Notes under the pieces: model-generated
Seen by the model: only the letters and a program-made list of their open reading frames with translations
Told to the model about the DNA's origin: nothing
Databases searched by the model: none
Part shown: in pieces, positions 15,935-64,000 of the stretch
Layout: every line of letters begins with the position of its first letter
Numbering within the stretch: position 1 is the first letter of the stretch
IMG/VR virus record: IMGVR_UViG_3300044972_002389
Span: 264,604 to 328,603 of that record
Direction: 5' to 3' (one strand)
DNA: 64,000 nt
Program-made: the position numbers and the translations under genes

Positions 15935-16015
15935 CTTTTTGAGGCAATGCAAGGAAAACCTCTTGCATTGCCTTTTCTCCCTGCTATACTGCTGAGGCAA
16001 ACAAGGAGCCTACCA

Positions 16016-17059
16016 ATGGAACTGGAAAACGCTTTTGTGCGTGTGATCAAAGGAAACACACGGCAGGGAGTGAGCGTTGACGGAACTGTGTTCCGTCTGC
16101 TGGGCCATCTCAATACTGATCAGTGGGGCACCTATATCACTGTAGATGGTCGTGGGCATGAAGGTACCCGGAATGGTAAAGCCCGGATTTATGTCAGCGC
16201 AACCGGCTATCAGATGATTGATGCCCAAGGTGCAGTGCAAGCTGACCCTGATATTATGAGCTTTGAGGAAACTGACTCCCGAACCGATGCAGAGATTGGT
16301 GCGGATCTCAAAGAGACTTTTGAGATTGTGGCTGAGATGACAGAGGCCACCACAACGGGTGTGATCAAGGGTTTGATCATCTCGGGGCCTGCTGGTATTG
16401 GCAAAAGCCACACTGTTGAGACGGTGCTGGACGAAACTGTTGGGATGCAATGCAAGCTTCAGGGCTTGGAGCCCAAGTATGAAATCATAAAAGGCAATCT
16501 CAGTGCCATTATTCTGTATTGCACCTTGTATCGCTACAGCAGCAAGGGCTCGGTGCTGGTGCTGGATGACTGCGATGGGCTGCTGTATGATGAAGATGGC
16601 TTGAACGTGCTGAAAGCAGTTTTGGACACCAAGAAGACCCGGCGGGTGCATTGGGGCACCAGCAGTACTGTCCTTGAAAAGGAAGGAGTGCCCACCAGCT
16701 TTGAGTTTGAAGGTTCAGTTGTGTTCCTCACCAACATCAAGTGGGACAATCCCAAGAGCCCTCGCATTGCCAACCATCTCAATGCAATAATGAGTCGAGT
16801 TCACTATTTGGACCTCAAGGTCGACACACTGCGTGAGCGTGTTATTCACATGCGTAATGTAGTTGACACAACGGACATGCTGTGGGAATACAATTTCAAC
16901 AAGAGGGATGTGGATGATCTCATGGGGTGGGTGATGGAAAACATCAACCGGATTCAGTTTGTAGACCTCAGGACCGTGCTGAAGGCAGCAGACCTAAAGC
17001 GTGCGATGCCCACGACGTGGCGCAAGCGTGCTGATCGAACACTGTGCAAGAGGGGTTGA
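16016..17059 (+). CDS. AAA-family ATPase
   Basis: GPAGIGKS Walker A, LVLDDCD Walker B; SD AAGGAG. Confidence 0.8.
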   Translation: MELENAFVRVIKGNTRQGVSVDGTVFRLLGHLNTDQWGTYITVDGRGHEGTRNGKARIYVSATGYQMIDAQGAVQADPDIMSFEETDSRTDAEIGADLKETFEIVAEMTEATTTGVIKGLIISGPAGIGKSHTVETVLDETVGMQCKLQGLEPKYEIIKGNLSAIILYCTLYRYSSKGSVLVLDDCDGLLYDEDGLNVLKAVLDTKKTRRVHWGTSSTVLEKEGVPTSFEFEGSVVFLTNIKWDNPKSPRIANHLNAIMSRVHYLDLKVDTLRERVIHMRNVVDTTDMLWEYNFNKRDVDDLMGWVMENINRIQFVDLRTVLKAADLKRAMPTTWRKRADRTLCKRG

Positions 17060-17061
17060 AT

Positions 17062-17337
17062 ATGCGAGTCACATGTTTTGTGCCTGTCCAGGAAGATTGG
17101 TATGGTAACTTCCAGATTGCGGATGACAGGCGGCACGATCTTACGCTACTCGTGCAGGTGAGTGCCATGAGTCTCAGCAATGGGCAATACCGGGTGTGCG
17201 TTTGGGGCAATGATGATTTTGGCTTTGAACGGGACTTTGAGCAGCCAGGCGAGGCCATGGTGCTGTATCAGCTGATTGTGAGCCAGCCCTATCCCACCCA
17301 AACTTGGCTCAAGAACCTTGATATGGTTCGGGCTTGA
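17062..17337 (+). CDS. hypothetical protein
   Basis: Tightly packed ORF in the early cluster. Confidence 0.55.
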   Translation: MRVTCFVPVQEDWYGNFQIADDRRHDLTLLVQVSAMSLSNGQYRVCVWGNDDFGFERDFEQPGEAMVLYQLIVSQPYPTQTWLKNLDMVRA

Positions 17338-17360
17338 TAGATACAGAAAGGAAAAATGGC

Positions 17361-17534
17361 ATGAAGCGAGTGCTGGTGACTGTGGAGTTCACACTCCGCG
17401 ATGACGACAGGCTGCATGAGATGAGCGAGGAGGCCCTGGCCACCGAAGTGCGCCATCTCTTTGAGCAAGAACAAGGGGGCGTTGCCATGTATGGCTTCAC
17501 GGGCGTGATGGCACTGATGGCCAAGGAGATTTAG
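17361..17534 (+). CDS. hypothetical protein
   Basis: Tightly packed ORF with purine-rich SD. Confidence 0.45.
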   Translation: MKRVLVTVEFTLRDDDRLHEMSEEALATEVRHLFEQEQGGVAMYGFTGVMALMAKEI

Positions 17535-17535
17535 C

Positions 17536-17730
17536 ATGACTACGGGCGAGAAATCAACAAAAACACTCCAACCCCACAACAAGGTAGTGAAGTCTCTTTT
17601 AAACCTTCGAGACGAACTGTATCTGAGATCGAATGATGCATCGTCTGACGAGATCTTTTTCAAGATCAACTCCTGCCTGTATAAAGAGTATCCCCATATC
17701 GGGGACACAGATGTAGCACAGGAGGAATAG
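17536..17730 (+). CDS. hypothetical protein
   Basis: SD AAGGAG, tightly packed. Confidence 0.5.
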   Translation: MTTGEKSTKTLQPHNKVVKSLLNLRDELYLRSNDASSDEIFFKINSCLYKEYPHIGDTDVAQEE

Positions 17731-17731
17731 C

Positions 17732-18010
17732 ATGACACTGGACCAAGTTATCCGCAACCTTGAGAACACCATCCTGGGCAAGCGCGGCTTGCTATTTGAC
17801 AGCATCAACTTTTACACAGGCGGAGATGGGGTGGCTGAGCGAGTCACGTCAGAGTTCCTCCGAGTGAACATCAGCGAGCTGGAGCGCATCCTAGCTGACC
17901 TCAAAAAAGTGCAAGAGGCAGCTACAGCAGCCAGCTGGGAACGCAACCCAGACCGTATGGGAGGTTGCTACACCCAAGAAGAGATTGACGCAAGCCAACG
18001 TTACCGCTAA
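17732..18010 (+). CDS. hypothetical protein
   Basis: SD GGAGG. Confidence 0.55.
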   Translation: MTLDQVIRNLENTILGKRGLLFDSINFYTGGDGVAERVTSEFLRVNISELERILADLKKVQEAATAASWERNPDRMGGCYTQEEIDASQRYR

Positions 18011-18034
18011 AGTGCGCAAACAAGGAGAATATTC

Positions 18035-18427
18035 ATGACACCTACCGATCAAGCTGCGCTGACTTATCTCGCAGAGTTCCTCAAGCGCAATCCGCAAATC
18101 CTGAAAACAGCTTACGGTAAGCATGCTGAGGGCAATGAAATGCAGGAGTTTCAAAGCTATTGTGAAAATTCCAGCAACTGGCAAATGTTGGGGCCGCGCC
18201 CGCCTAACGAGGATGACTATTTCAAGGGCACCAGTATTGGAGTGTATCTTGAGGGTTCCACCCCAAATGAATACGTTGAACCAACCAACACTGTGCCAGC
18301 CGTCAAGGTCTCACAGATGCGCTATTTTGCGGTGCTGGATGAGATGAGTGACTGTGGCTTCAACCTACTGGAAATGAAAGACGGCAGTTTCCGAGTGGGC
18401 CAGCTTGCTGACAATTGGCCGGAATAA
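18035..18427 (+). CDS. hypothetical protein
   Basis: SD AAGGAG. Confidence 0.55.
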   Translation: MTPTDQAALTYLAEFLKRNPQILKTAYGKHAEGNEMQEFQSYCENSSNWQMLGPRPPNEDDYFKGTSIGVYLEGSTPNEYVEPTNTVPAVKVSQMRYFAVLDEMSDCGFNLLEMKDGSFRVGQLADNWPE

Positions 18428-18441
18428 GAAAGGAAATCAAG

Positions 18442-18624
18442 ATGGGTAACATTCTCGTCGTAACTCTCATGCTCACAGGAGATCCTTCTTTTGAGCCCAG
18501 GCGCCTGGACACTGTGAGCAAAGGCTGCGAGTTCGAACGGGCCACTGTGGCTGGCATGAACCGTGCCGAAGCTGAGGCTGGAACCAACCGCCGCTATATG
18601 CCCTACTGCGTGGGGAAGATGTAA
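18442..18624 (+). CDS. hypothetical protein
   Basis: SD AAGGA. Confidence 0.45.
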   Translation: MGNILVVTLMLTGDPSFEPRRLDTVSKGCEFERATVAGMNRAEAEAGTNRRYMPYCVGKM

Positions 18625-18625
18625 G

Positions 18626-19093
18626 ATGCCTACTCTATGGATGTTGGTGGGTGTGCCTGGCAGCGGGAAGTCCACATGGCTTGATCAGCAGGGCTTTGGT
18701 CGAGACACTGCTATCATCAGCACCGATCAGCACATTGATGCTGAGGCAGCTCGTCAAGGCCGAACATACAGCGAGGTGTTCAAGGGCTTTGTGAAGCGTG
18801 CTACCTCCATCATGAACGCTGATTTGGCCATTGCCATCAAGGATGGAGACGACATTTGTTGGGATCAAACCAATGTCACCAGCAAAAGCCGTGCAGCTAA
18901 GCTGGCCTCTGTGCCCAACACCTACCGGAAGGTGGCAGTGTTCTTTCCCACTCCTGAGCCCAAGGAGCTGGAACGCAGGCTCGCCAGCCGGCCAGGCAAG
19001 CATATTCCCTGGAACATCCTCCAGGGCATGGCCAGTCACTTGGAGATACCCACTGAGGACGAAGGCTTTGATGAGGTTGTGGTTGTGTCATAG
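18626..19093 (+). CDS. AAA_33-type P-loop kinase (polynucleotide kinase-like)
   Basis: MLVGVPGSGKSTW, ISTD, WDQTN...R, P...EGFD. Confidence 0.85.
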   Translation: MPTLWMLVGVPGSGKSTWLDQQGFGRDTAIISTDQHIDAEAARQGRTYSEVFKGFVKRATSIMNADLAIAIKDGDDICWDQTNVTSKSRAAKLASVPNTYRKVAVFFPTPEPKELERRLASRPGKHIPWNILQGMASHLEIPTEDEGFDEVVVVS

Positions 19094-19099
19094 CGCACT

Positions 19100-19210
19100 G
19101 AGCCGGGGAAAATTGCCCTGATAACTCCCAGGGCGGGCTCCGTATTGGGACCTTGGAAACAGGGTTAAGGAGGGGTTAATTTGCCCGTTTAGCAGGAACC
19201 TCCGGCCATA
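19100..19210. ncRNA. candidate structured intergenic RNA, class unknown
   Basis: Several GC-rich stems including a GAAA tetraloop hairpin; see findings. Confidence 0.35.
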
Positions 19211-19279
19211 AAACTATTGACACAACCACACACTACAAATACACTACTGATGATATCAATCCACTGAAAGGATATAAAC

Positions 19280-20005
19280 ATGGCTTTCTTCACTTCATTC
19301 TTCAAAAGCAAGATGGACTCACTGCACGATGGGGCAATCAAGCTGATGGCCCAATGGGACCCTGAGGCAGTTTCTTCAGCCCAGCTACGGGAGTGGGACA
19401 CTCAGGCCCAGGAGATGGCTACGGCTGCTGCACGAGCTGAAACTGACAGCAAGCAGGCTGCTGAGCGACTAGCCAACATCCAAAGTAACTTAGCTCGCTA
19501 CACGGCTGCTGCTGAAAAGCTGCTGACCGCTGGTAACGAAACTGCTGCCAACAAGGCTGCTGATGAAGCACTCTCGTATCAAGCTCAGCTGAAGGATGCT
19601 GAGGAAGAGGCTGCTGATGCCTCTGAGTGGGCTACTGAAACTCGCCAAGCTGCACAAAATGCCCAGCGACTGGTCCTCGAAGGCCGGCAGAAGCTGGACC
19701 GTGCTCGCCGAGACCAAGAGCGTGCGGAACAGGAGGCCAAGGTCTCTGAGGCACGCCGAGCAGAACGGGAACGTATGGCTGGCATCAGCAAAGGGCTGTC
19801 GGGTACAGACGCAGCACTGGATGCTATGGCAGCAAATGCTCGTGAGTCTCGCGAGCGCGCTGCTGCTAACCGTATTCGGAGTGATGCACTGGGCAAGGCC
19901 TCAGACAACGACTCTGCTGTAGCTGCTGCTCTTGCAGAAGTTGACGGCAAAGGCAAAAGCAACAGCCTGCACGAAAAGCTGGCTGCACTTCGCAGTAAGG
20001 TGTGA
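19280..20005 (+). CDS. PspA/IM30-like coiled-coil protein
   Basis: Ala/Glu-rich long coiled coil, DPE motif near the N-terminus, terminal EKLAALR helix as in PspA. Confidence 0.6.
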   Translation: MAFFTSFFKSKMDSLHDGAIKLMAQWDPEAVSSAQLREWDTQAQEMATAAARAETDSKQAAERLANIQSNLARYTAAAEKLLTAGNETAANKAADEALSYQAQLKDAEEEAADASEWATETRQAAQNAQRLVLEGRQKLDRARRDQERAEQEAKVSEARRAERERMAGISKGLSGTDAALDAMAANARESRERAAANRIRSDALGKASDNDSAVAAALAEVDGKGKSNSLHEKLAALRSKV

Positions 20006-57334: not shown

Positions 57335-57595
57335 ATGCAAGCCAACGAATTTGCCAAAAAGCCACAAAAACCTCAAAAAAAGACCACGCAATCCGTTGTT
57401 GCCAGTCCACCATCATTGGTTGAGAAAAAGTTAAAATTCAAAATCCCTCACCAAATGCGAGAGGTAACACACAATACCTCTCAACCTATGACAGGCGTGT
57501 TGCCTCCTGGTCACTCAGTGAAGCCAGGTAGTGAATTGGAACTGATTAGAGACACTGATCCAGACTTGTGGGCTCGTATATTGAGATGGGATTGA
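57335..57595 (+). CDS. hypothetical protein, first gene of a late operon
   Basis: TAAATA at 57303, SD GAGG. Confidence 0.55.
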   Translation: MQANEFAKKPQKPQKKTTQSVVASPPSLVEKKLKFKIPHQMREVTHNTSQPMTGVLPPGHSVKPGSELELIRDTDPDLWARILRWD

Positions 57596-57597
57596 AA

Positions 57598-60351
57598 ATG
57601 AAAACAAAAATTAGTAAAATTTTACAAAAAGCACTAGTTGAAGCCATAGCCCCAAGGGGTGGGCCCAAGAGCGCTCCTCCCGCCAAGCTAACAGTTAGTA
57701 GTGCCACCTTGGATTCAAGACTGGAGATGATTAACAATGTATTGGACAACATGTATGACCACATTAGTGGTATCCTGCTTGTTGGTCCTACAGGCATTGG
57801 AAAAACATCATTTGTTTATCAATTTAGTGAACTTATGGGCATGAATGCAGTAGTTGTGGAGGCACCGCATGTTAGTGAAGAGCACTTGGTTAACATTCCA
57901 TTTATGGTATATAATCCCATTAACAAAACCAAAAAAGCAGGCACTGACCAACTGACCCCAGTAGAGCCAGCAAGAAAAGCTGCTAAAAGTCCGAACCAAC
58001 CTATAGATATCAAAAAATGGGACGTAGTTTACGGTAAAAGCCATCTTGTAGCTTCCATTGAAGCGTTGAGGCCCGTAAGTGATCAAGAGCTCTTGAACCA
58101 CATGAACTCAAAATCTAGCAATAATACCAAAGCTCTTTGGAAAGGCTTAGGTGGCACCGAAACAACTATACCACCTAGAGTGGCTGAATTGCGTAGACGC
58201 TACAGCAGCATCCTATTCATTGATGAATTTATGCGTCAAGTAACAGGTGGGGTTCGTAATATTCTTCGTGATTTGGTTGTGGACAAGAAGGTTGGTGATA
58301 ATGACTTACCTCCCAACGTGTACTCTATGTATGCCAGCAACTTGAAGGATACTGGATCCCAGGGCACTGTTGAACAAATGCCCAGCTTTTACCAATTCCA
58401 ACAGATTCACTTCCCTACTCCCAGCAAGCAAGATTTTTTCCATTATTTGATTGCTGAATTTGAAAAAGATGGAGTTCATCTCAAGCCAGAAGTGGCAACA
58501 GCATTCTACAAAGCACTAGATGACAAACATATAAGTTATGATGATGCAGCATCAGAAATTCGCACCAGTCCTCGCCGGTGGGAGCAAATTATCAGTTATG
58601 TGAATGCAAGTGTTCCTGTCACTACAAAAGAACAAGCATCCTCTCTATTAGCAAACATAAAAGCTAATTTTGAAGATATTGATAAAGTAAGCAGTCTCTA
58701 TAAACTAGTTGATCAAATTGTACGTAATATTATTTGGGACACAAGTGGCGAGGACTTTGCAGGTGTGAAGGCAAATAGCCCTACCTTATGGCGTGATACA
58801 CTTATGCATCAAGTTGAAACAGCTGAAAAAATGGGCGATCAGAGAGCTTATGTTCCCATTGTTGCAGGTCAGCCTGGTATTGGCAAAACTGCGGAAATGA
58901 CTTCAATAGCTGACAAATTGAACTTAAGGCTTATAAGAATTTCTTGCACAAGTTTACGTCCTGAAGACGTTACTGGTATTCCATTGCCTGATGAAAAAGA
59001 GGGTAAATTTGATGTTAAGTTTGCTGATCCTCCGTTGTATCGAAAGATTATTGATCAAATGGAACAAAAAAAGGAAGCTTTTCTCAATTCACCAAAAATT
59101 TCAGAGGAGAGAAAACAAGAGTGGCTCGGCAAGCCCAAGCAATATTTGTTGTTCTTTGATGAATTCAACCGTCCTGAAGAAGCCACTACTTACAACACAC
59201 TGCGCCGTGTTATTTTGGACAAAAGTTTTACGGATGATATCAAGTTGCCCAAAAATCTAATTGTCGTTGCAGCCATGAATCCAACAGACCTTAAAGTCCA
59301 GCCACTCACAGGTCATATGAAAGATGCGACTGACTATATAGCAACAGCCCCACGTTGGAGCTCACAGAAAGAATTTCATGATACCTCTTTGCTGCGACCA
59401 GACCTAAGTGAGGAAGCATCCACTATTGCCCGGATGTTGGTTCATAACTTTGCTGAAAAATTTAAGCTGGATGTTCCTGACCCTAGCAAAAACATAGATT
59501 CTGAAAGCAGGCAATTCTATATTCAAGTGGGAGATGATGATGTATATATGTCAGGTAGAGAGTATTCAGACATGTTACTGGCCATGCAGCGTGGATTGGA
59601 TCGGGTAGTTAACAAAAAAGATCAGTATGTGCTGCCCAATGGTGAATTTGATAGCGACGGCTATATTGATGCCTTACTGCGCATGGCTAGCACAAAAATC
59701 ATGATGACACTAGACAATGTTTTGCACAAAAATCAAATTGACAGAGAAATGTTTGTTGACCAACTGGATCTTTGGTTGCAAGAACAACGAGAACTATTGA
59801 CCAGCAGTCAAACAACCGGAACCAGTTTGGAAAGCTTGTTTGACAATGCAGTTCGCAATCCCAAGAAGCATCTCAAAGACAATGCAGCATTTATGAATTG
59901 GGTTGATACACAATTTAGCCCAGCTGACTTCACCAATGAGTTCCTAGCTTGGTTAACAAACGTTGCTGCACAAGAGGCCAACAAGTTTGATCTGTTGGTC
60001 AGCAAAACGCATAACAAAAAAGTCATACAAGATGGTGTAGTTCAAATAACTGATGATTTGATCGACAAAGTGAACTTCATTGTTGATGAAATTATCATGG
60101 CAATGAATGTTCACAAGCTCAGTAGCCAAATTGGACAAAGTATGGAAGCTGCATTGAGAAAGTTTTGGACCAGTGTGTTCATTGCTGATATTGAAAGAAT
60201 GGAAGAAGAGGCTAAAGATCTTGCCAAAACTGATAAGGCTGCATCAAAAGCTGCCTTGGCTGCTGTAGAGGGGTATCAAAACACGTTGATGGATTATCAA
60301 CGCAAGGTTGCAGCCAAAGTAAGAAGTTTCAGAAAACCCGCAGGAACATAA
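57598..60351 (+). CDS. tandem double-AAA+ ATPase (MoxR/AAA_5-like)
   Basis: Module 1: GPTGIGKT, ILFIDEF, SPRRWE. Module 2: GQPGIGKT, DVTGIP, FFDEFNR, VAAMNP, SGREY. Confidence 0.85.
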   Translation: MKTKISKILQKALVEAIAPRGGPKSAPPAKLTVSSATLDSRLEMINNVLDNMYDHISGILLVGPTGIGKTSFVYQFSELMGMNAVVVEAPHVSEEHLVNIPFMVYNPINKTKKAGTDQLTPVEPARKAAKSPNQPIDIKKWDVVYGKSHLVASIEALRPVSDQELLNHMNSKSSNNTKALWKGLGGTETTIPPRVAELRRRYSSILFIDEFMRQVTGGVRNILRDLVVDKKVGDNDLPPNVYSMYASNLKDTGSQGTVEQMPSFYQFQQIHFPTPSKQDFFHYLIAEFEKDGVHLKPEVATAFYKALDDKHISYDDAASEIRTSPRRWEQIISYVNASVPVTTKEQASSLLANIKANFEDIDKVSSLYKLVDQIVRNIIWDTSGEDFAGVKANSPTLWRDTLMHQVETAEKMGDQRAYVPIVAGQPGIGKTAEMTSIADKLNLRLIRISCTSLRPEDVTGIPLPDEKEGKFDVKFADPPLYRKIIDQMEQKKEAFLNSPKISEERKQEWLGKPKQYLLFFDEFNRPEEATTYNTLRRVILDKSFTDDIKLPKNLIVVAAMNPTDLKVQPLTGHMKDATDYIATAPRWSSQKEFHDTSLLRPDLSEEASTIARMLVHNFAEKFKLDVPDPSKNIDSESRQFYIQVGDDDVYMSGREYSDMLLAMQRGLDRVVNKKDQYVLPNGEFDSDGYIDALLRMASTKIMMTLDNVLHKNQIDREMFVDQLDLWLQEQRELLTSSQTTGTSLESLFDNAVRNPKKHLKDNAAFMNWVDTQFSPADFTNEFLAWLTNVAAQEANKFDLLVSKTHNKKVIQDGVVQITDDLIDKVNFIVDEIIMAMNVHKLSSQIGQSMEAALRKFWTSVFIADIERMEEEAKDLAKTDKAASKAALAAVEGYQNTLMDYQRKVAAKVRSFRKPAGT

Positions 60352-60369
60352 TCAAAGATAGGACGAACA

Positions 60370-62775
60370 ATGGCATTTTCTGTCAAGAGCAATTTAGCCA
60401 AAACACTTTTGGCGTTGGATACCAAGACCTCAGTAACCCCCAAAACAAGGGTTGCTGAGGCTTGGACTATGCGGGCACGCGAAATGGGCGAAACGCCCTT
60501 CAAAAAATCCACACTTCAAGATCGGCACATACAAGAAGTGTTGCAGCATGCCAGTATGGTTACTGGGGTCCCGCTCCCTGATATTGAGCGAGCCATGCAG
60601 AAAAAAATGGCTGAGATTGAAGAGATCAAAAAGTACAGCCCTATTCTCTATGAAACCATTGCTCATAATGCTGCTGAAAATGCTGTATTTGATTTGGTAA
60701 GCAGTGTGCGAAGTAATGTAATGGATCCGCATCCAAGTTTACTAAAATTTGATGAAATAACTTTCCTCAAACTGGCCCGAATGGTTCAGGCGGAGCACCC
60801 TATGTTTCGCCCATTGAAACAACCTGCTGATCCAATCCGTAGAGTGTGGAAAGTTACTCCAATCTTGGTACCTAGTAACCTGCGTGAATACAAAAAGTAC
60901 AATGGTGTGAACACTGCTTGTGCAACTGCTCAAGGTGACTTTGTATTCAACAAACCGTTCATGCAAAACTTGATGGATTGGGCAGTTATTGAAGGTGTTC
61001 ACCCCCAAGGCAAAAAATATCACAGCAATGGAGGTCCCATTCCTGATGCCTATGTGTATGTGGAATTTTTGATTATGCATGAGTACATGCATTTTGCCTA
61101 TGGCGATTTCAATTATAGCAAACAATTGCCGCAATTCAATCACAAAGTTCACAACTGGGCTTCAGATTTCAGGAGCAATTACGACCTCGTTAAAAACAAC
61201 TTTGCGCAATTGCCTATTGGGTTGTTCAGTGATCACATCAATAGTGATCGGCAAGGCAGCTACACTGACATGGCACAGCTGGTTCACGATGAACTCAAAA
61301 AACTGCCACCACATTTGCAGAAATTGTGGGAAAAAATAGCCAAAATTGATGAAGAACCCAACAAACCCAAAACGCCTAAAAAAACCAGCACTAAACCGCC
61401 ACCGCCTGTGATCAAGGTGCGGTATAGGGCAAGTGAGAGTGATGTTGTAAGGCTCCCAGATGGTACATATGGGCAGGTTACAAAAGTTGATCCGGATGGA
61501 AGTTTTGATACCCGTCCACTAACGCAGGACGAGGCAACACAACTGCTCAATTATCCCAAAGGCTATCGTGTGCGGGCTAATCCACAAATAACAGAAAGCA
61601 AGAGAAAAAGGATTTTGTTGGAAGGCCGTTGGAAGCCTGATGATGTGATTTGGATGAAACCCAAGCGGGACAAACCTACTCCTCCACCTCAACCTCCTGA
61701 GCCCCCATTACCACCTGAACCGGAAGATGATGAGGACGAACCAACACCGCCTCCTGTAATTGACATGGAGGGGGAAGATCCACCACCTGACGAAGATGAT
61801 GAAGGAGAAGGAAGCAGTGGTGGTGAAGAAGGTGAAGACGAGGAAGAGGACGGTAAGGAAGGCAAAGGCAAAGACGAAAAAGAGAAAGAAAAGAAAAAAG
61901 AAAAAGTCTTTGGCCCGTCTCCAGATGAAATAGCTGAAAAACTCAAGGACCAGATCAAGGATTCTAACATTACACCTCGGCCAGGGACTCCTAGTGGTAG
62001 AGACGATCCCCGGATGGGTCCTGGCCAAGCTGGCAGTCCTGGTGGCGCAGGGGCATTGCCTTTGGGTTCTGCCAAAAAGCGTGTTGAAGACATCAAGCCG
62101 CATATGAATTGGAAACAGTTGATCAAGTTGATGGTGTCCAGTAGTCAATTGGCAACAGACACATCGTACACCAAGCCCAGCAGGAGAAACATCACAGGTG
62201 CGCCCATAGCTGCCAAGTTAGGGGCTGCTGCAATCAAACCTGGTCAAGTCAAGCGACCTGTTCCCATCAACAAAGTGTTGCTTGCATTCGACACATCAGG
62301 TAGCATGTGGGGGTTTGTACCTACTGCCTTGAAAGAGGCTGAAATGCTCTTGAAGCAGTTGGGCAAAGTTGATTATCCTTTTGGTGTTATGTTCTGGGCT
62401 GGTAGTCACGAAAGCTTTGTGGTAAACCAAGGACAAGATTTTTATGCTCCTGTTGACAACTTGCGCCAACTTAATGAACCTGTAGACAAAAGCAAACAAA
62501 TCAAGGGCTGGAACAATGTTTTGAAACAGCATGGCACAGGTGGCACAATGTTTACACCTGCAATGGTAAGCGAGCTATCTGCTGCTGCCTCAGATGGTTT
62601 CAATATTTTGATATTCTCAGATACTGACCTATTGGACAATCAAAATTGGCTCAACTTCCTGAAATTGTGGAAAGCACACAAAGCCAATGTGTTTTGTGTG
62701 TTCAACGATGAACCAAGTTGGCGTAAGGCAGTGAAAAAAGTGGGACAAAATACACCACATTTTACTCATTTGTAA
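60370..62775 (+). CDS. HExxH metallopeptidase-like + VWA domain protein (DUF2201-like)
   Basis: TACAT...F..N..F, MHEYMH, N.ASD; Pro/acidic linker; MIDAS DTSGSM, GGT, FSD. Confidence 0.82.
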   Translation: MAFSVKSNLAKTLLALDTKTSVTPKTRVAEAWTMRAREMGETPFKKSTLQDRHIQEVLQHASMVTGVPLPDIERAMQKKMAEIEEIKKYSPILYETIAHNAAENAVFDLVSSVRSNVMDPHPSLLKFDEITFLKLARMVQAEHPMFRPLKQPADPIRRVWKVTPILVPSNLREYKKYNGVNTACATAQGDFVFNKPFMQNLMDWAVIEGVHPQGKKYHSNGGPIPDAYVYVEFLIMHEYMHFAYGDFNYSKQLPQFNHKVHNWASDFRSNYDLVKNNFAQLPIGLFSDHINSDRQGSYTDMAQLVHDELKKLPPHLQKLWEKIAKIDEEPNKPKTPKKTSTKPPPPVIKVRYRASESDVVRLPDGTYGQVTKVDPDGSFDTRPLTQDEATQLLNYPKGYRVRANPQITESKRKRILLEGRWKPDDVIWMKPKRDKPTPPPQPPEPPLPPEPEDDEDEPTPPPVIDMEGEDPPPDEDDEGEGSSGGEEGEDEEEDGKEGKGKDEKEKEKKKEKVFGPSPDEIAEKLKDQIKDSNITPRPGTPSGRDDPRMGPGQAGSPGGAGALPLGSAKKRVEDIKPHMNWKQLIKLMVSSSQLATDTSYTKPSRRNITGAPIAAKLGAAAIKPGQVKRPVPINKVLLAFDTSGSMWGFVPTALKEAEMLLKQLGKVDYPFGVMFWAGSHESFVVNQGQDFYAPVDNLRQLNEPVDKSKQIKGWNNVLKQHGTGGTMFTPAMVSELSAAASDGFNILIFSDTDLLDNQNWLNFLKLWKAHKANVFCVFNDEPSWRKAVKKVGQNTPHFTHL

Positions 62776-62777
62776 TC

Positions 62778-63413
62778 ATGCAGGCAGAGATTCATCCGCT
62801 AGACTGGGTTTACAAAAATTTTGATGTGCCTAGCACAACCAAAATCTCCTTGAGTCCCAGTAATGAGATAGTTGTTGACGGTGATATTGTAGCTTGGGGA
62901 GTAGGGCAATCCTTTCCCCAGCTACCTGTGCGTTTCAAAAAAGTCACAGGCGTCTGCGGCTTTGCCAGCATGGGGCTTGAATCTCTCTTAGGTGCGCCAC
63001 AAGAGTGCGGGTCCTTTTATTGCTCTGGTAACGAACTAGAGTCTCTTGAACATGGACCAACAACGATTGTAGGCGGCGAATACAATTGCTCTTATAATCG
63101 TTTGAGTGATTTAACAGGCCTGCCCACTGAAATTCCAGGCAGGCTCAGCTGCCATGGTAACTGGTTAACCTCCTTACAAGGGTTTCCTAACCACGTTGGA
63201 ACAAGTGTTGACTTAACATGGCACAATAGTTTGCCTTTGTTGAGAACTTTGGTTGCTAAGGAAGTTGGGTTCTCAAACACAGGTGACACTTTCGAGAAGG
63301 CTTACCAGGTAGCCAAGATATTGAACAAATACGCAGGACAAGGCAAACGTGCCATGTTTGATTGCCAAAAAGACTTGGAAGATGCAGGATTTGAAGGAAA
63401 TGCAAGATGGTAG
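62778..63413 (+). CDS. LRR-like repeat protein, array member 1
   Basis: L.SL.G.P....G...C..N repeats; C-terminal tail shared with the next gene. Confidence 0.8.
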   Translation: MQAEIHPLDWVYKNFDVPSTTKISLSPSNEIVVDGDIVAWGVGQSFPQLPVRFKKVTGVCGFASMGLESLLGAPQECGSFYCSGNELESLEHGPTTIVGGEYNCSYNRLSDLTGLPTEIPGRLSCHGNWLTSLQGFPNHVGTSVDLTWHNSLPLLRTLVAKEVGFSNTGDTFEKAYQVAKILNKYAGQGKRAMFDCQKDLEDAGFEGNARW

Positions 63414-63958
63414 ACAAAAATGAAATAATGGAGTTGTTTGAAAAATATTTTAAAACAGCTGATGAGATAACCATTGACGATAAGGGATTGGTCTCTTGTA
63501 CTGGAGATGTAGGTCTCCAACCAGAACTGAAGCACGAGAGGTTACCTGTGTCTTTTGATATGGTTGATGGTGATTTCTGGTGCCACAACAACCAGCTCAC
63601 AACACTTGAAGGTGCACCCACTTCAGTTGGTGGTGATTTCGGGTGCTACCACAACCAGCTCACAACACTTGAAGGTGCACCCACTTCAGTTGGTGGTGAT
63701 TTCAGGTGCTACCACAACCAGCTCACCTCACTTGAAGGCATGCCAGCCGTAGAAGGAACCTTGTGGCTCTCCTACAGCCCCACGTTGCCACTGCTTCGTT
63801 GTTTGCTCGCAAAAGAGATTCAACTGTATCCCAAAGATGGGAAGCACAAAACAGCTGAAAAAATTCTCAATCGATACGCAGGGCAAGGCAAACGAGCAAT
63901 GTTTGACTGCCAAAAAGACTTGGAAGATGCAGGCTTTGAAGGAAATGCCAGATGGTAG
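63407..63958 (+). CDS. LRR-like repeat protein, array member 2
   Basis: 21-aa repeats GDFxCxxNQLTTLEGAPTSVG; same C-terminal tail. Confidence 0.85.
   Translation: MVDKNEIMELFEKYFKTADEITIDDKGLVSCTGDVGLQPELKHERLPVSFDMVDGDFWCHNNQLTTLEGAPTSVGGDFGCYHNQLTTLEGAPTSVGGDFRCYHNQLTSLEGMPAVEGTLWLSYSPTLPLLRCLLAKEIQLYPKDGKHKTAEKILNRYAGQGKRAMFDCQKDLEDAGFEGNARW
63569..63739 (+). repeat. 63-bp near-perfect tandem repeat (about 2.7 copies) encoding LRR-like units
   Basis: Units start at 63569, 63632 and 63695. Confidence 0.9.
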
Positions 63959-64000
63959 ACAAAAAAGAAGTAATGGCTTTGTTGGAAAAATATTTCAAAA
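63952..64000 (+). CDS. LRR-like array member 3 (5' end only, truncated by the window)
   Basis: MVDKKEVMALLEKYFK, paralogous to member 2's MVDKNEIMELFEKYFK; same AGATGGTAG overlap. Confidence 0.8.
   Translation, partial: MVDKKEVMALLEKYFK

What the first reader, a model, noticed from the sequence alone, without database searches (positions are those of the whole stretch)
63569..63739. 63-bp LRR-like units vary mainly at the F-x-C-x-x-N positions
Seen: the units are nearly nucleotide-identical, with changes concentrated in F-x-C-x-x-N: TGG/GGG/AGG (W/G/R), CAC/TAC (H/Y) and AAC/CAC (N/H), all non-synonymous. A T-to-S change and divergence appear at the end of the third unit. Inference: these x positions are the exposed beta-strand face of the solenoid. 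The pattern suggests recent duplication plus diversifying selection on a binding surface, loosely like variable lymphocyte receptors.
Basis: partly seen in the sequence, partly recalled or inferred. Interest (0 to 1): 0.65.

Follow-up and report, generated by a model that had tools for sequence, protein, structure and literature searches.

The report
Hypervariable LRR binder genes in jumbo phage
The three near-identical 63-bp units belong to a small leucine-rich-repeat protein of a jumbo phage; it is one of a large, undescribed family of tandemly arrayed phage genes whose presumed ligand-binding positions are hypervariable while the rest of each repeat is almost frozen.

Summary
Window 63563-63751 holds three 63-bp (21-aa) units inside ORF 63407-63958 (183 aa). 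The differences sit at codons 2, 6, 8 and 9 of the unit and in the tail of unit 3.

The protein folds as one capped LRR solenoid (pLDDT 96). Its repeats are most like the 21-residue cysteine-ladder LRR of internalin J and the IpaH/SspH/YopM type.

Unit 2 is a chimera: front of unit 3, back of unit 1. An independent metagenome contig carries the same gene with exactly 63 bp fewer, so unit number changes by recombination.

Within this gene only one substitution (AGG/GGG) need postdate the duplication. The selection claim therefore rests on the family. It has over 1900 homologues, viral where taxa are known, in arrays of about 10 or more paralogues.

- Entropy peaks at unit positions 4, 6, 8 and 9.
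- Those positions are rich in N, D, S, Y, H and W.
- Their pN/pS is 1.46 (CI 1.05-2.07) against 0.45 for the scaffold.

No reverse transcriptase, template repeat or A-specific pattern was found, so it is not a DGR. Three near-identical strains share identical variable codons, so there is no ongoing hypermutation. The ligand and function are unknown. My best guess is a germline repertoire of host-protein binders. Reads could not be mapped.

The parts
63407..63958 (+). Gene for the 183-aa LRR protein P0001: N-cap (residues 1-52), three 21-aa LRR units, a terminal LRR-like strand and a helical C-cap
   Evidence: ORF; AF2 pLDDT 96.3, pTM 0.90; 1918 homologues at E<=1e-3
63563..63625 (+). LRR unit 1 (V-D-G-D-F-W-C-H-N-N...); hypervariable codons at 63572-63574, 63578-63580 and 63584-63589
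   Evidence: family-wide entropy per position
63626..63688 (+). LRR unit 2, a chimera: codons 1-12 match unit 3 except codon 6 (GGG vs AGG), codons 10-21 match unit 1. It is absent from the 2-unit allele in L037. Hypervariable codons at 63635-63637, 63641-63643 and 63647-63652
63689..63751 (+). LRR unit 3, the last unit, with a diverged tail leading into the C-cap. Hypervariable codons at 63698-63700, 63704-63706 and 63710-63715
   Evidence: last units of other family genes show the same diverged tail
63752..63958 (+). Terminal LRR-like strand plus helical C-terminal cap. This is the most conserved part across paralogues, and its 3' end is a likely site of recombination between genes
   Evidence: C-terminal HMM hits every paralogue; helices 148-157 and 161-174; strain differences cluster at 63898-63951; the 3' end of the L038 gene joins L029's post-array sequence at 98.7%
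62778..63413 (+). Upstream paralogue (P0002, 211 aa) with more diverged LRR units and the same C-terminal cap. It is stable between relatives (97% identical in L029, same variable residues)
63407..63413 (+). ATGGTAG junction: the start codon of one paralogue overlaps the Trp-stop of the previous one. The same junction recurs at 63952-63958 and throughout arrays in related phages
63952..64000 (+). Start of a third paralogue (M-V-D-K-K-E-V...), cut off by the end of the 328,603-bp record
57568..62775 (+). Syntenic neighbours upstream of the array: a double AAA+ (MoxR-like) ATPase at 57568-60351 and a DUF2201_N protein at 60370-62775. A functional link to the LRR genes was not tested
   Evidence: same gene order in L029

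Best explanation
The units are three repeats of a small, signal-less protein that is a single capped LRR solenoid. It is encoded at the end of a jumbo-phage contig, and the gene belongs to a large family that is viral where taxa are known. Family members sit in head-to-tail arrays with overlapping stop and start codons.

Each 21-residue unit has a nearly frozen scaffold, often identical at synonymous sites, and four hypervariable codons (positions 4, 6, 8, 9; LRR positions 3, 5, 7, 8). These line the concave beta-sheet and together form a variable binding surface.

Diversity is germline and has four sources:
- gain and loss of whole 63-bp units by unequal recombination or slippage (shown);
- re-use of unit cassettes between positions and paralogues (supported);
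- gain and loss of whole genes by recombination in the conserved 3' ends (supported);
- point substitutions retained by positive selection (supported).

The function is inferred. Each paralogue probably binds a different, fast-evolving host molecule, most likely an intracellular host protein such as a defence or takeover target. The array would then serve as a host-range or counter-defence repertoire.
For: - Fold and class: pLDDT 96.3. All 50 top structure matches are LRR proteins, with Z up to 8.7. The profile hits internalin J at 4.6e-15, SspH2 at 6e-12, and SspH1, IpaH7.8 and YopM.
- Hypervariability: 563 distinct units from 121 proteins give entropy of 3.06, 3.59, 3.43 and 3.18 bits at positions 4, 6, 8 and 9. 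Core positions give 0.6 bits or less. N, D, S and Y make up 63% of residues at those positions.
- DNA of 23 internal units from 5 genes: variable codons pN 0.443 and pS 0.145; scaffold pN 0.045 and pS 0.091.
- DNA of 30 genes (126 units): pN/pS 1.46 (bootstrap CI 1.05-2.07) against 0.45 (0.35-0.60).
- Apparent orthologue pair: variable-codon pN 0.111 with no synonymous change; scaffold pN 0.019.
- Unit indel: L037 is 99.5% identical apart from an exact 63-bp gap. Family lengths step by about 21 aa.
- Cassette re-use: 13 of 104 cassettes recur at other units or genes.
- Arrays: 9-10 adjacent genes in related contigs. Array content differs between near-identical strains.
- Context: replication, nucleotide-metabolism and auxiliary genes rather than a tail module.
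- Range: Atlas clusters are 94-100% Viruses, and a pattern scan of 185,579 prokaryote genomes found none.
Against: - No ligand, expression or localisation data exist, so the function is inference.
- Solvent exposure was inferred, not computed from coordinates.
- The lower CI bound of pN/pS is only 1.05. The distances are uncorrected, repeats are not independent lineages, and gene conversion may depress scaffold pS.
- Within the window gene only one substitution is independent evidence.
- Three near-identical strains show no change at the variable codons, so turnover is not fast on that timescale.
- The first paralogue is conserved between relatives, variable residues included, so not all members diversify.
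- The 2-unit allele comes from one short-read contig.
Confidence: 0.7

Rival explanations
1. Relaxed constraint plus concerted evolution, with no positive selection. Gene conversion among units and paralogues keeps the scaffold homogeneous. Exposed positions simply tolerate any polar residue and drift.
For: The scaffold is near-identical even at synonymous sites, as conversion would produce. The lower bound of pN/pS at variable codons is 1.05. Variable codons have few synonymous sites, so pS there is noisy. The residue spectrum N/D/Y/H/S/G is the one- or two-step neighbourhood of an AAY codon.
Against: pN at variable codons exceeds both local and scaffold pS: 0.443 against 0.145 and 0.091 in the homogeneous set. 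The ratio of variable-codon pN to scaffold pS is 1.87, CI 1.22-3.05. K, E and Q are depleted although they are one step away. The aromatic and polar bias resembles known binding surfaces.
Confidence: 0.17
2. The evolutionary picture is the same but the role differs. The proteins are displayed on the virion, with the conserved C-terminal part as anchor, and act as interchangeable adhesins or receptor-binding accessories that set host range from outside the cell.
For: Hypervariability and paralogue arrays are typical of receptor-binding proteins. LRR or beta-helix modules are predicted on fibre proteins of phage Goslar. A diverse LRR-like protein sits in the tail module of a vibriophage (PMC10945359). 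The C-terminal part is conserved in all paralogues.
Against: The arrays seen here lie beside ATPase, DUF2201, Sir2, methyltransferase, oxygenase, polymerase and RIIB genes, not tail genes. The proteins are small single domains with no recognisable fibre or trimerisation module. The structure search suggests the C-terminal helices are an LRR cap.
Confidence: 0.25
3. Targeted hypermutation by a diversity-generating retroelement or a similar mechanism writes the variable codons.
For: Variable codons 4, 8 and 9 are mostly NNT or NNC with a fixed third base. This resembles DGR mutagenesis of AAY codons.
Against: - No RVT_1 match at E<=1 in the 328-kb record or in five related records totalling about 730 kb, with positive controls working.
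- No second copy of the unit exists elsewhere in the record.
- No unit has A at all variable sites, and the many scaffold adenines, including the invariant AAC, do not vary.
- Three strains that differ by 0.5-2.5% have identical variable codons.
- The records are only 12-77% complete, so an RT on a missing part cannot be fully excluded.
Confidence: 0.03
4. The repeat or its unit number is an assembly artefact at a contig end.
For: The record ends 45 bp after this gene, inside the paralogue array. Several related contigs also end in arrays.
Against: An independent JGI assembly has the identical three-unit sequence. The reading frame, fold and family are coherent.
Confidence: 0.02

Closest known systems
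Internalin J (Listeria) 21-residue cysteine-ladder LRR
   Same: It has the same 21-residue period, with Cys replacing the hydrophobic residue at LRR position 6 before the Asn. It is the best sequence match among solved structures (3bz5_A, E 4.6e-15; NCBIfam internalin_J hits).
   Different: InlJ is a large, secreted, cell-wall-anchored bacterial protein. The phage proteins are 160-310 aa with their own N- and C-caps, no signal peptide or anchor, and lie in phage gene arrays.
Bacterial-type LRR of type III effectors (IpaH, SspH1/2, SlrP, YopM)
   Same: They share short 20-22-residue units with a Pro in the variable segment, and profile matches are significant (SspH2 6e-12, SspH1 7e-8, IpaH7.8 4e-7, YopM 3e-5). 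From established structures, those proteins use the concave face to bind substrate.
   Different: There is no NEL ubiquitin-ligase or other effector domain and no secretion signal. The family is viral, arrayed and hypervariable.
Lamprey variable lymphocyte receptors
   Same: Both are LRR solenoids whose diversity is concentrated on concave-face positions and in unit number. VLRs appear among the weak structural matches.
   Different: VLR diversity is somatic, assembled from flanking cassettes with a cytidine deaminase, and the proteins have disulfide-bonded LRRNT/LRRCT caps. Here diversity is germline across paralogues and strains, with identical variable codons in three near-identical strains.
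Plant resistance-gene LRR clusters (NLR, Cf-type receptor-like proteins)
   Same: This is the closest evolutionary analogue. Both show tandem paralogue arrays, unequal crossing-over that changes LRR number, sequence exchange between paralogues, and positive selection on the solvent-exposed x residues of xxLxLxx (established knowledge; e.g. PMC6771003 listed).
   Different: The plant genes are eukaryotic immune receptors with signalling domains. These are stand-alone binder domains in a phage.
Diversity-generating retroelement targets (e.g. Bordetella phage Mtd)
   Same: Both are phage-encoded variable binding proteins, and both show an NNY-like codon pattern at variable sites.
   Different: There is no RT, no template repeat and no adenine specificity, and the fold is LRR rather than C-type lectin or Ig.
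TAL-effector repeats
   Same: Both have tandem repeats that are nearly identical in DNA except for a few hypervariable codons per repeat.
   Different: There is no small code: 487 distinct residue tetrads occur among 663 units. The fold is also different.
Vibrio phage VB_VaC_SRILMA hypothetical protein WXB48033.1
   Same: It comes from a cultured phage and has eight copies of the same 21-aa unit type, varying at the same x positions.
   Different: It lacks the N- and C-terminal caps of this family and is a single gene beside a DnaB-like helicase gene.

Membership tests
Leucine-rich repeat superfamily | Tandem 20-30-residue units with the LxxLxLxxN/CxL core | tested here: met
   F-x-C-x-x-N-x-L-x-x-L recurs with a spacing of exactly 21 residues in 477 of 497 consecutive pairs. 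F57, C59, N62, L64, L67 and their equivalents in the other units are nearly invariant in A1.
Leucine-rich repeat superfamily | Curved solenoid fold with a parallel beta-sheet on the concave face | tested here: met
   AF2 pLDDT is 96.3, with short strands at each F-x(-C). All 50 best chains in pdb_via_wide are LRR proteins (Z 6.4-8.7). Foldseek alone gave no E<=1e-3 match.
Leucine-rich repeat superfamily | Significant match to curated LRR sequence models | tested here: inconclusive
   Pfam LRR_4 scores only 13.2 bits (E 0.11, cut-off 27) on P0002, and P0001 has no LRR hit. The family profile nevertheless matches solved LRR proteins at E 4.6e-15 to 3e-5.
InlJ-type cysteine-ladder LRR | 21-residue period with conserved Cys at core position 6 | tested here: met
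   The unit regex required the Cys, so the 563/563 count is circular. The A1 columns, where C is at least 90% conserved, are the unbiased evidence.
Diversity-generating retroelement | Reverse transcriptase gene near the target | tested here: not met
   No RVT_1 match at E<=1 in G000 (328 kb) or in five related records. The records are incomplete (12-77%).
Diversity-generating retroelement | Template repeat nearly identical to the variable region | tested here: not met
   The only full match to the 189-bp unit block in the record is the block itself.
Diversity-generating retroelement | Variation confined to sites that are adenine in the template | tested here: not met
   No unit carries A at all variable sites, and scaffold adenines are invariant.
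Variable lymphocyte receptor system | Somatic assembly of LRR cassettes into an incomplete germline gene | tested here: not met
   The genes are complete ORFs in arrays. Variable codons are identical in three strains from different samples. Read-level heterogeneity could not be tested.
TALE-like one-repeat-one-symbol code | Small alphabet of variable residue sets | tested here: not met
   There are 487 distinct tetrads in 663 units, and the commonest occurs 6 times.
IpaH/SspH NEL effector family | C-terminal novel E3 ligase domain | tested here: not met
   Matches to SspH2, SlrP and IpaH cover only the LRR part. The protein ends in a 60-residue helical cap.

The most novel reading that the evidence does not exclude
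Jumbo phages carry a germline repertoire of antibody-like LRR binders. Each array of about 10 to 16 or more paralogues would be a set of neutralising or retargeting proteins against different, rapidly evolving host factors such as defence proteins. The set would be renewed by unit and gene shuffling, as a phage-side mirror of plant NLR clusters and of the genomic accordions of poxviruses and giant viruses.
Probability: 0.3. Interest if true: 0.8.

Novelty: new variant of a known kind. Interest (0 to 1): 0.6.

Why it matters
Hypervariable LRR surfaces shaped by duplication, unequal crossing-over and positive selection are classic in plant and animal immunity. I found no description of them as an arrayed multigene family in bacteriophages (literature searches). 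One paper notes that LRR proteins are reported mainly from eukaryotes, bacteria and viruses of eukaryotes (PMC10945359).

The family is large. It has over 1900 homologues, all labelled hypothetical apart from a few 'DUF1330' labels. Pfam gives only occasional LRR_4 and other scattered hits and has no model of the caps.

If the paralogues bind host proteins, the arrays would be a new class of host-range or counter-defence determinants. They would also be a natural library of compact, cysteine-ladder repeat binders. The same unit type occurs in cultured Vibrio phages, so the idea can be tested experimentally.

Tried and rejected
- DGR or template-driven mutagenesis is rejected: no RT, no template repeat and no adenine specificity.
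- A TALE-like code is rejected because the tetrad alphabet is too large.
- An assembly artefact is rejected by the identical independent contig.
- Pfam, PHROGs and NCBIfam gave no functional name. There was only weak LRR_4, phrog_21719 of unknown function, and sub-threshold SspH2 and InlJ hits.
- Foldseek against PDB gave nothing at E<=1e-3.
- The phage collection gave only partial matches, in uncultured huge phages LR7565xx/LR745206 and in three Vibrio phages.
- A pattern scan of prokaryote genomes found no relative. This scan has limited sensitivity.
- Alignment A1 was too diverse for the search for related loci. A2 recovered only 5 metagenome loci.
No read mapping, repeat-number heterogeneity or expression check was therefore possible, and I did not try another route.
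- The first structure request did not answer and was resent.
- Model coordinates are not exposed, so no solvent-accessibility calculation was made.
- Complex prediction was not used because no specific partner is claimed.
- The costly all-representatives protein search was not run because no main claim depends on it.

Full report
**Where the finding lies.** The window is the last 64 kb of a 328,603-bp IMG/VR virus record, classed as linear with a CheckV completeness of 77%. The window encodes terminase, virion proteins, ribonucleotide reductase, topoisomerase II, a helicase and similar genes. Nearly all genes are on the + strand and GC is about 44%. It is therefore a jumbo tailed phage. The only cultured-phage match for the neighbouring ATPase is Ralstonia phage RsoM2USA, at 34% identity.

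**The observation.** Tandem Repeats Finder reports period 63, 2.8 copies, 93% matches and score 303 at 63563-63738. The repeat lies in ORF 63407-63958 (183 aa, P0001).

In frame, the units are U1 63563-63625, U2 63626-63688 and U3 63689-63751. U1 and U2 differ at four bases, all non-synonymous:
- codon 2, GAT/GGT;
- codon 6, TGG/GGG;
- codon 8, CAC/TAC;
- codon 9, AAC/CAC.

U2 and U3 differ at codon 6 (GGG/AGG) and in codons 13-21. That stretch includes three synonymous changes.

It missed the codon-2 change, which lies just upstream of its start, and the synonymous changes in U3. An independent JGI contig (L038) carries exactly the same three units, so the structure is real.

**What the protein is.** Pfam, PHROGs and NCBIfam give no significant family. 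With a 46-sequence alignment, AlphaFold2 gives a confident single-domain model with mean pLDDT 96.3 and pTM 0.90. It has an N-terminal helix and short strands, a short strand at each F-x(-C), a last strand at residues 118-122, and C-terminal helices.

Foldseek finds nothing significant. In the exhaustive VIA search all 50 best chains are LRR proteins, including SDS22, U2A', internalins, SspH1, IpaH9.8, YopM, TLRs and a VLR-like protein, with Z up to 8.7. That Z is middling; the unanimity of the matches is the evidence.

A profile of the family matches these solved structures:

| Structure | E-value |
|---|---|
| Internalin J | 4.6e-15 |
| SspH2 | 6e-12 |
| SspH1 | 7e-8 |
| IpaH7.8 | 4e-7 |
| YopM | 3e-5 |

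The alignments place the unit's F, C and N on LRR core positions 4, 6 and 9. This is a 21-residue cysteine-ladder LRR of the internalin J type, flanked by the family's own caps. There is no further domain. By inspection there is no signal peptide.

**Is unit 2 a recent duplicate?** U2 equals U3 over codons 1-12 except for one base in codon 6. It equals U1 over codons 10-21. Unequal crossing-over between the two units of a two-unit gene would give exactly this chimera.

Such a two-unit gene exists. The ENA contig L037 is 99.5% identical to the window over 1212 bp, including the upstream paralogue, and lacks exactly 63 bp. Deletion from three units by the same mechanism cannot be excluded. Either way, unit number changes by homologous recombination or slippage.

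It follows that only one substitution in this gene (AGG/GGG, codon 6) need postdate the duplication. The other U1/U2 differences are inherited from the older U1/U3 divergence. The window gene alone therefore cannot show selection.

**The family.** The word-indexed protein search found 1918 proteins at E<=1e-3. Their lengths step by about 21 residues: about 162, 183, 203, 224, 244, 265, 286 and 308 aa. That corresponds to two to nine units. Where the Atlas clusters give taxa, they are 94-100% Viruses. A pattern scan of one genome per prokaryote species found no relative, although that scan has limited sensitivity.

I extracted 663 units with a regular expression anchored on C, N/Q and two L. 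Consecutive anchors are exactly 21 residues apart in 477 of 497 cases. Over 563 distinct units the entropies are as follows:

| Unit position | Entropy (bits) |
|---|---|
| 4 | 3.06 |
| 6 | 3.59 |
| 8 | 3.43 |
| 9 | 3.18 |
| 1, 5, 17, 19 (core) | 0.2-0.6 |
| 13, 14 | about 1.1-1.2 |

Positions 20 and 21 are also variable (3.0 and 2.7 bits), mainly between subfamilies.

The four hypervariable positions alternate with the core residues F5 and C7 and precede N10. They correspond to LRR positions 3, 5, 7 and 8. These are the solvent-exposed concave-face positions that contact ligands in known LRR complexes. I take this from established knowledge; I could not compute accessibility because model coordinates are not exposed.

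Residues at these positions are strongly skewed:

| Residue | Share at variable positions | Background |
|---|---|---|
| N | 17.5% | 6.4% |
| D | 16.6% | 5.0% |
| S | 16.2% | 6.6% |
| Y | 12.8% | 3.0% |
| H | 5.6% | 1.5% |
| W | 3.7% | 1.2% |

Aliphatic residues and K, E and Q are depleted. There is no small code: 487 distinct tetrads occur among 663 units.

**DNA evidence.** In the closest subfamily the scaffold codons are almost identical in DNA between units and genes. Codons 4, 6, 8 and 9 differ by one to three bases.

- For 23 distinct internal units from five genes, variable codons have pN 0.443 and pS 0.145. The scaffold has pN 0.045 and pS 0.091.
- Over 30 distinct genes (126 units, within-gene pairs, last unit dropped), pN/pS is 1.46 at variable codons (bootstrap over genes, 95% CI 1.05-2.07). 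It is 0.45 (0.35-0.60) for the scaffold. Variable-codon pN over scaffold pS is 1.87 (1.22-3.05).
- In an apparent orthologue pair from two contigs (same length, near-identical outside the variable codons), variable codons have pN 0.111 with no synonymous change, against scaffold pN 0.019 and pS 0.042.

These are uncorrected distances on recombining repeats. I read them as good but not conclusive support for diversifying selection.

Thirteen of 104 distinct seven-codon cassettes recur at other unit positions or in other genes. One unit of the orthologue pair differs at five residues at once. Whole-unit exchange therefore also contributes.

**Arrays.** The window holds an upstream paralogue (62778-63413, P0002) and the first 16 codons of a third (63952 onward). 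All are joined by ATGGTAG overlaps. The record ends there.

Related IMG/VR contigs carry 9-10 adjacent paralogues with the same junction and the same conserved C-terminal part. One 71-kb contig holds at least 16. Several contigs end inside arrays, so assembly probably breaks there.

A 49-kb relative (L029) keeps the order ATPase, DUF2201 protein, LRR array, and has four array genes. Its first array gene is 97% identical to P0002, with the same variable residues. Its second has six units and other variable residues, 54% identical to P0001 including gaps. The upstream gene is 77% identical.

In L038, a gene 96% identical to P0001 is the last of the array. Its 3' end continues into L029's post-array genes at 98.7%. 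The strain differences in the window gene cluster in the N-terminal codons and in 63898-63951; none falls in the LRR. Gene number therefore also changes, apparently by recombination in the conserved 3' ends.

**Mechanisms excluded.**
- No reverse transcriptase is found at E<=1 in this record or in five related ones, while the positive controls respond.
- The unit block has no second copy in the record.
- Variation is not tied to adenines.
- Three strains from different samples share identical variable codons.

A DGR or any fast hypermutation is thus unlikely. The remaining caveat is that all records are incomplete. The NNT/NNC look of codons 4, 8 and 9 has a simpler explanation. The divergence is young, and the favoured residues N, D, H, Y, S and G all have NNY codons.

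**Function.** This part is inference. The protein is a binder-only module with no catalytic domain. The arrays lie among replication, nucleotide-metabolism and auxiliary genes. In two phages they lie downstream of an AAA+/DUF2201 pair.

I favour intracellular binding of variable host proteins, as host-range or counter-defence determinants. A virion-displayed adhesin role is a serious rival. LRR modules are predicted on Goslar fibre proteins, and a diverse LRR-like gene lies in a vibriophage tail module (PMC10945359).

I found no description of this family in the literature searches. A cultured Vibrio phage protein (WXB48033.1) consists of eight units of the same type without the caps and offers an experimental entry point.

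**Limits.** No expression, localisation or ligand data exist.

Noticed in passing
window 63952-64000 (end of record G000): The 328.6-kb record ends 45 bp into a third LRR paralogue. Related contigs also end inside such arrays, and one 71-kb contig is classed as having inverted terminal repeats because LRR genes sit at both ends. The arrays probably break assemblies and may lie near genome ends.
   Followed up: partly
window 57568-62775; L029 4907-9943: A 927-aa protein with two AAA+ modules (MoxR-like) and an 801-aa DUF2201_N protein precede the LRR array. The same gene order occurs in a relative. Whether this pair acts with the LRR proteins was not tested.
   Followed up: partly
window about 61700-62000 (within ORF 60370-62775): There is a long proline-rich, acidic and then lysine-rich low-complexity linker in the DUF2201_N protein, with short tandem repeats at 61859-61906. 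The PHROG label 'HNH endonuclease' for this protein (phrog_1314) seems at odds with the Pfam DUF2201_N hit.
   Followed up: no
window 16001-20000: This is a GC-rich stretch (0.525 against about 0.44 elsewhere). It holds small ORFs including an AAA_33 kinase-like protein (18563-19093) and a weak PspA/IM30-like protein (19280-20005). It may be a recently acquired island.
   Followed up: partly
L039 5827-6462 (Vibrio phage VB_VaC_SRILMA, WXB48033.1): This cultured-phage hypothetical protein is made of eight 21-aa units of the same F-x-C-x-x-N-x-L-T-S-L type, varying at the same x positions. It lacks this family's caps and lies beside a DnaB-like helicase gene.
   Followed up: partly
proteins P0012, P0014: JGI names some family members 'uncharacterized protein (DUF1330 family)'. 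Nothing in the Pfam scan of P0001 and P0002 or in the fold supports that label, so it is probably a spurious annotation.
   Followed up: no
LR756501/LR756503 (13 places), LR756502, LR745206: Uncultured huge phages of 630-735 kb contain multiple weak matches (31-35% identity) to the N-cap and LRR part. The family or a sister family may therefore also be expanded in the largest known phages.
   Followed up: no
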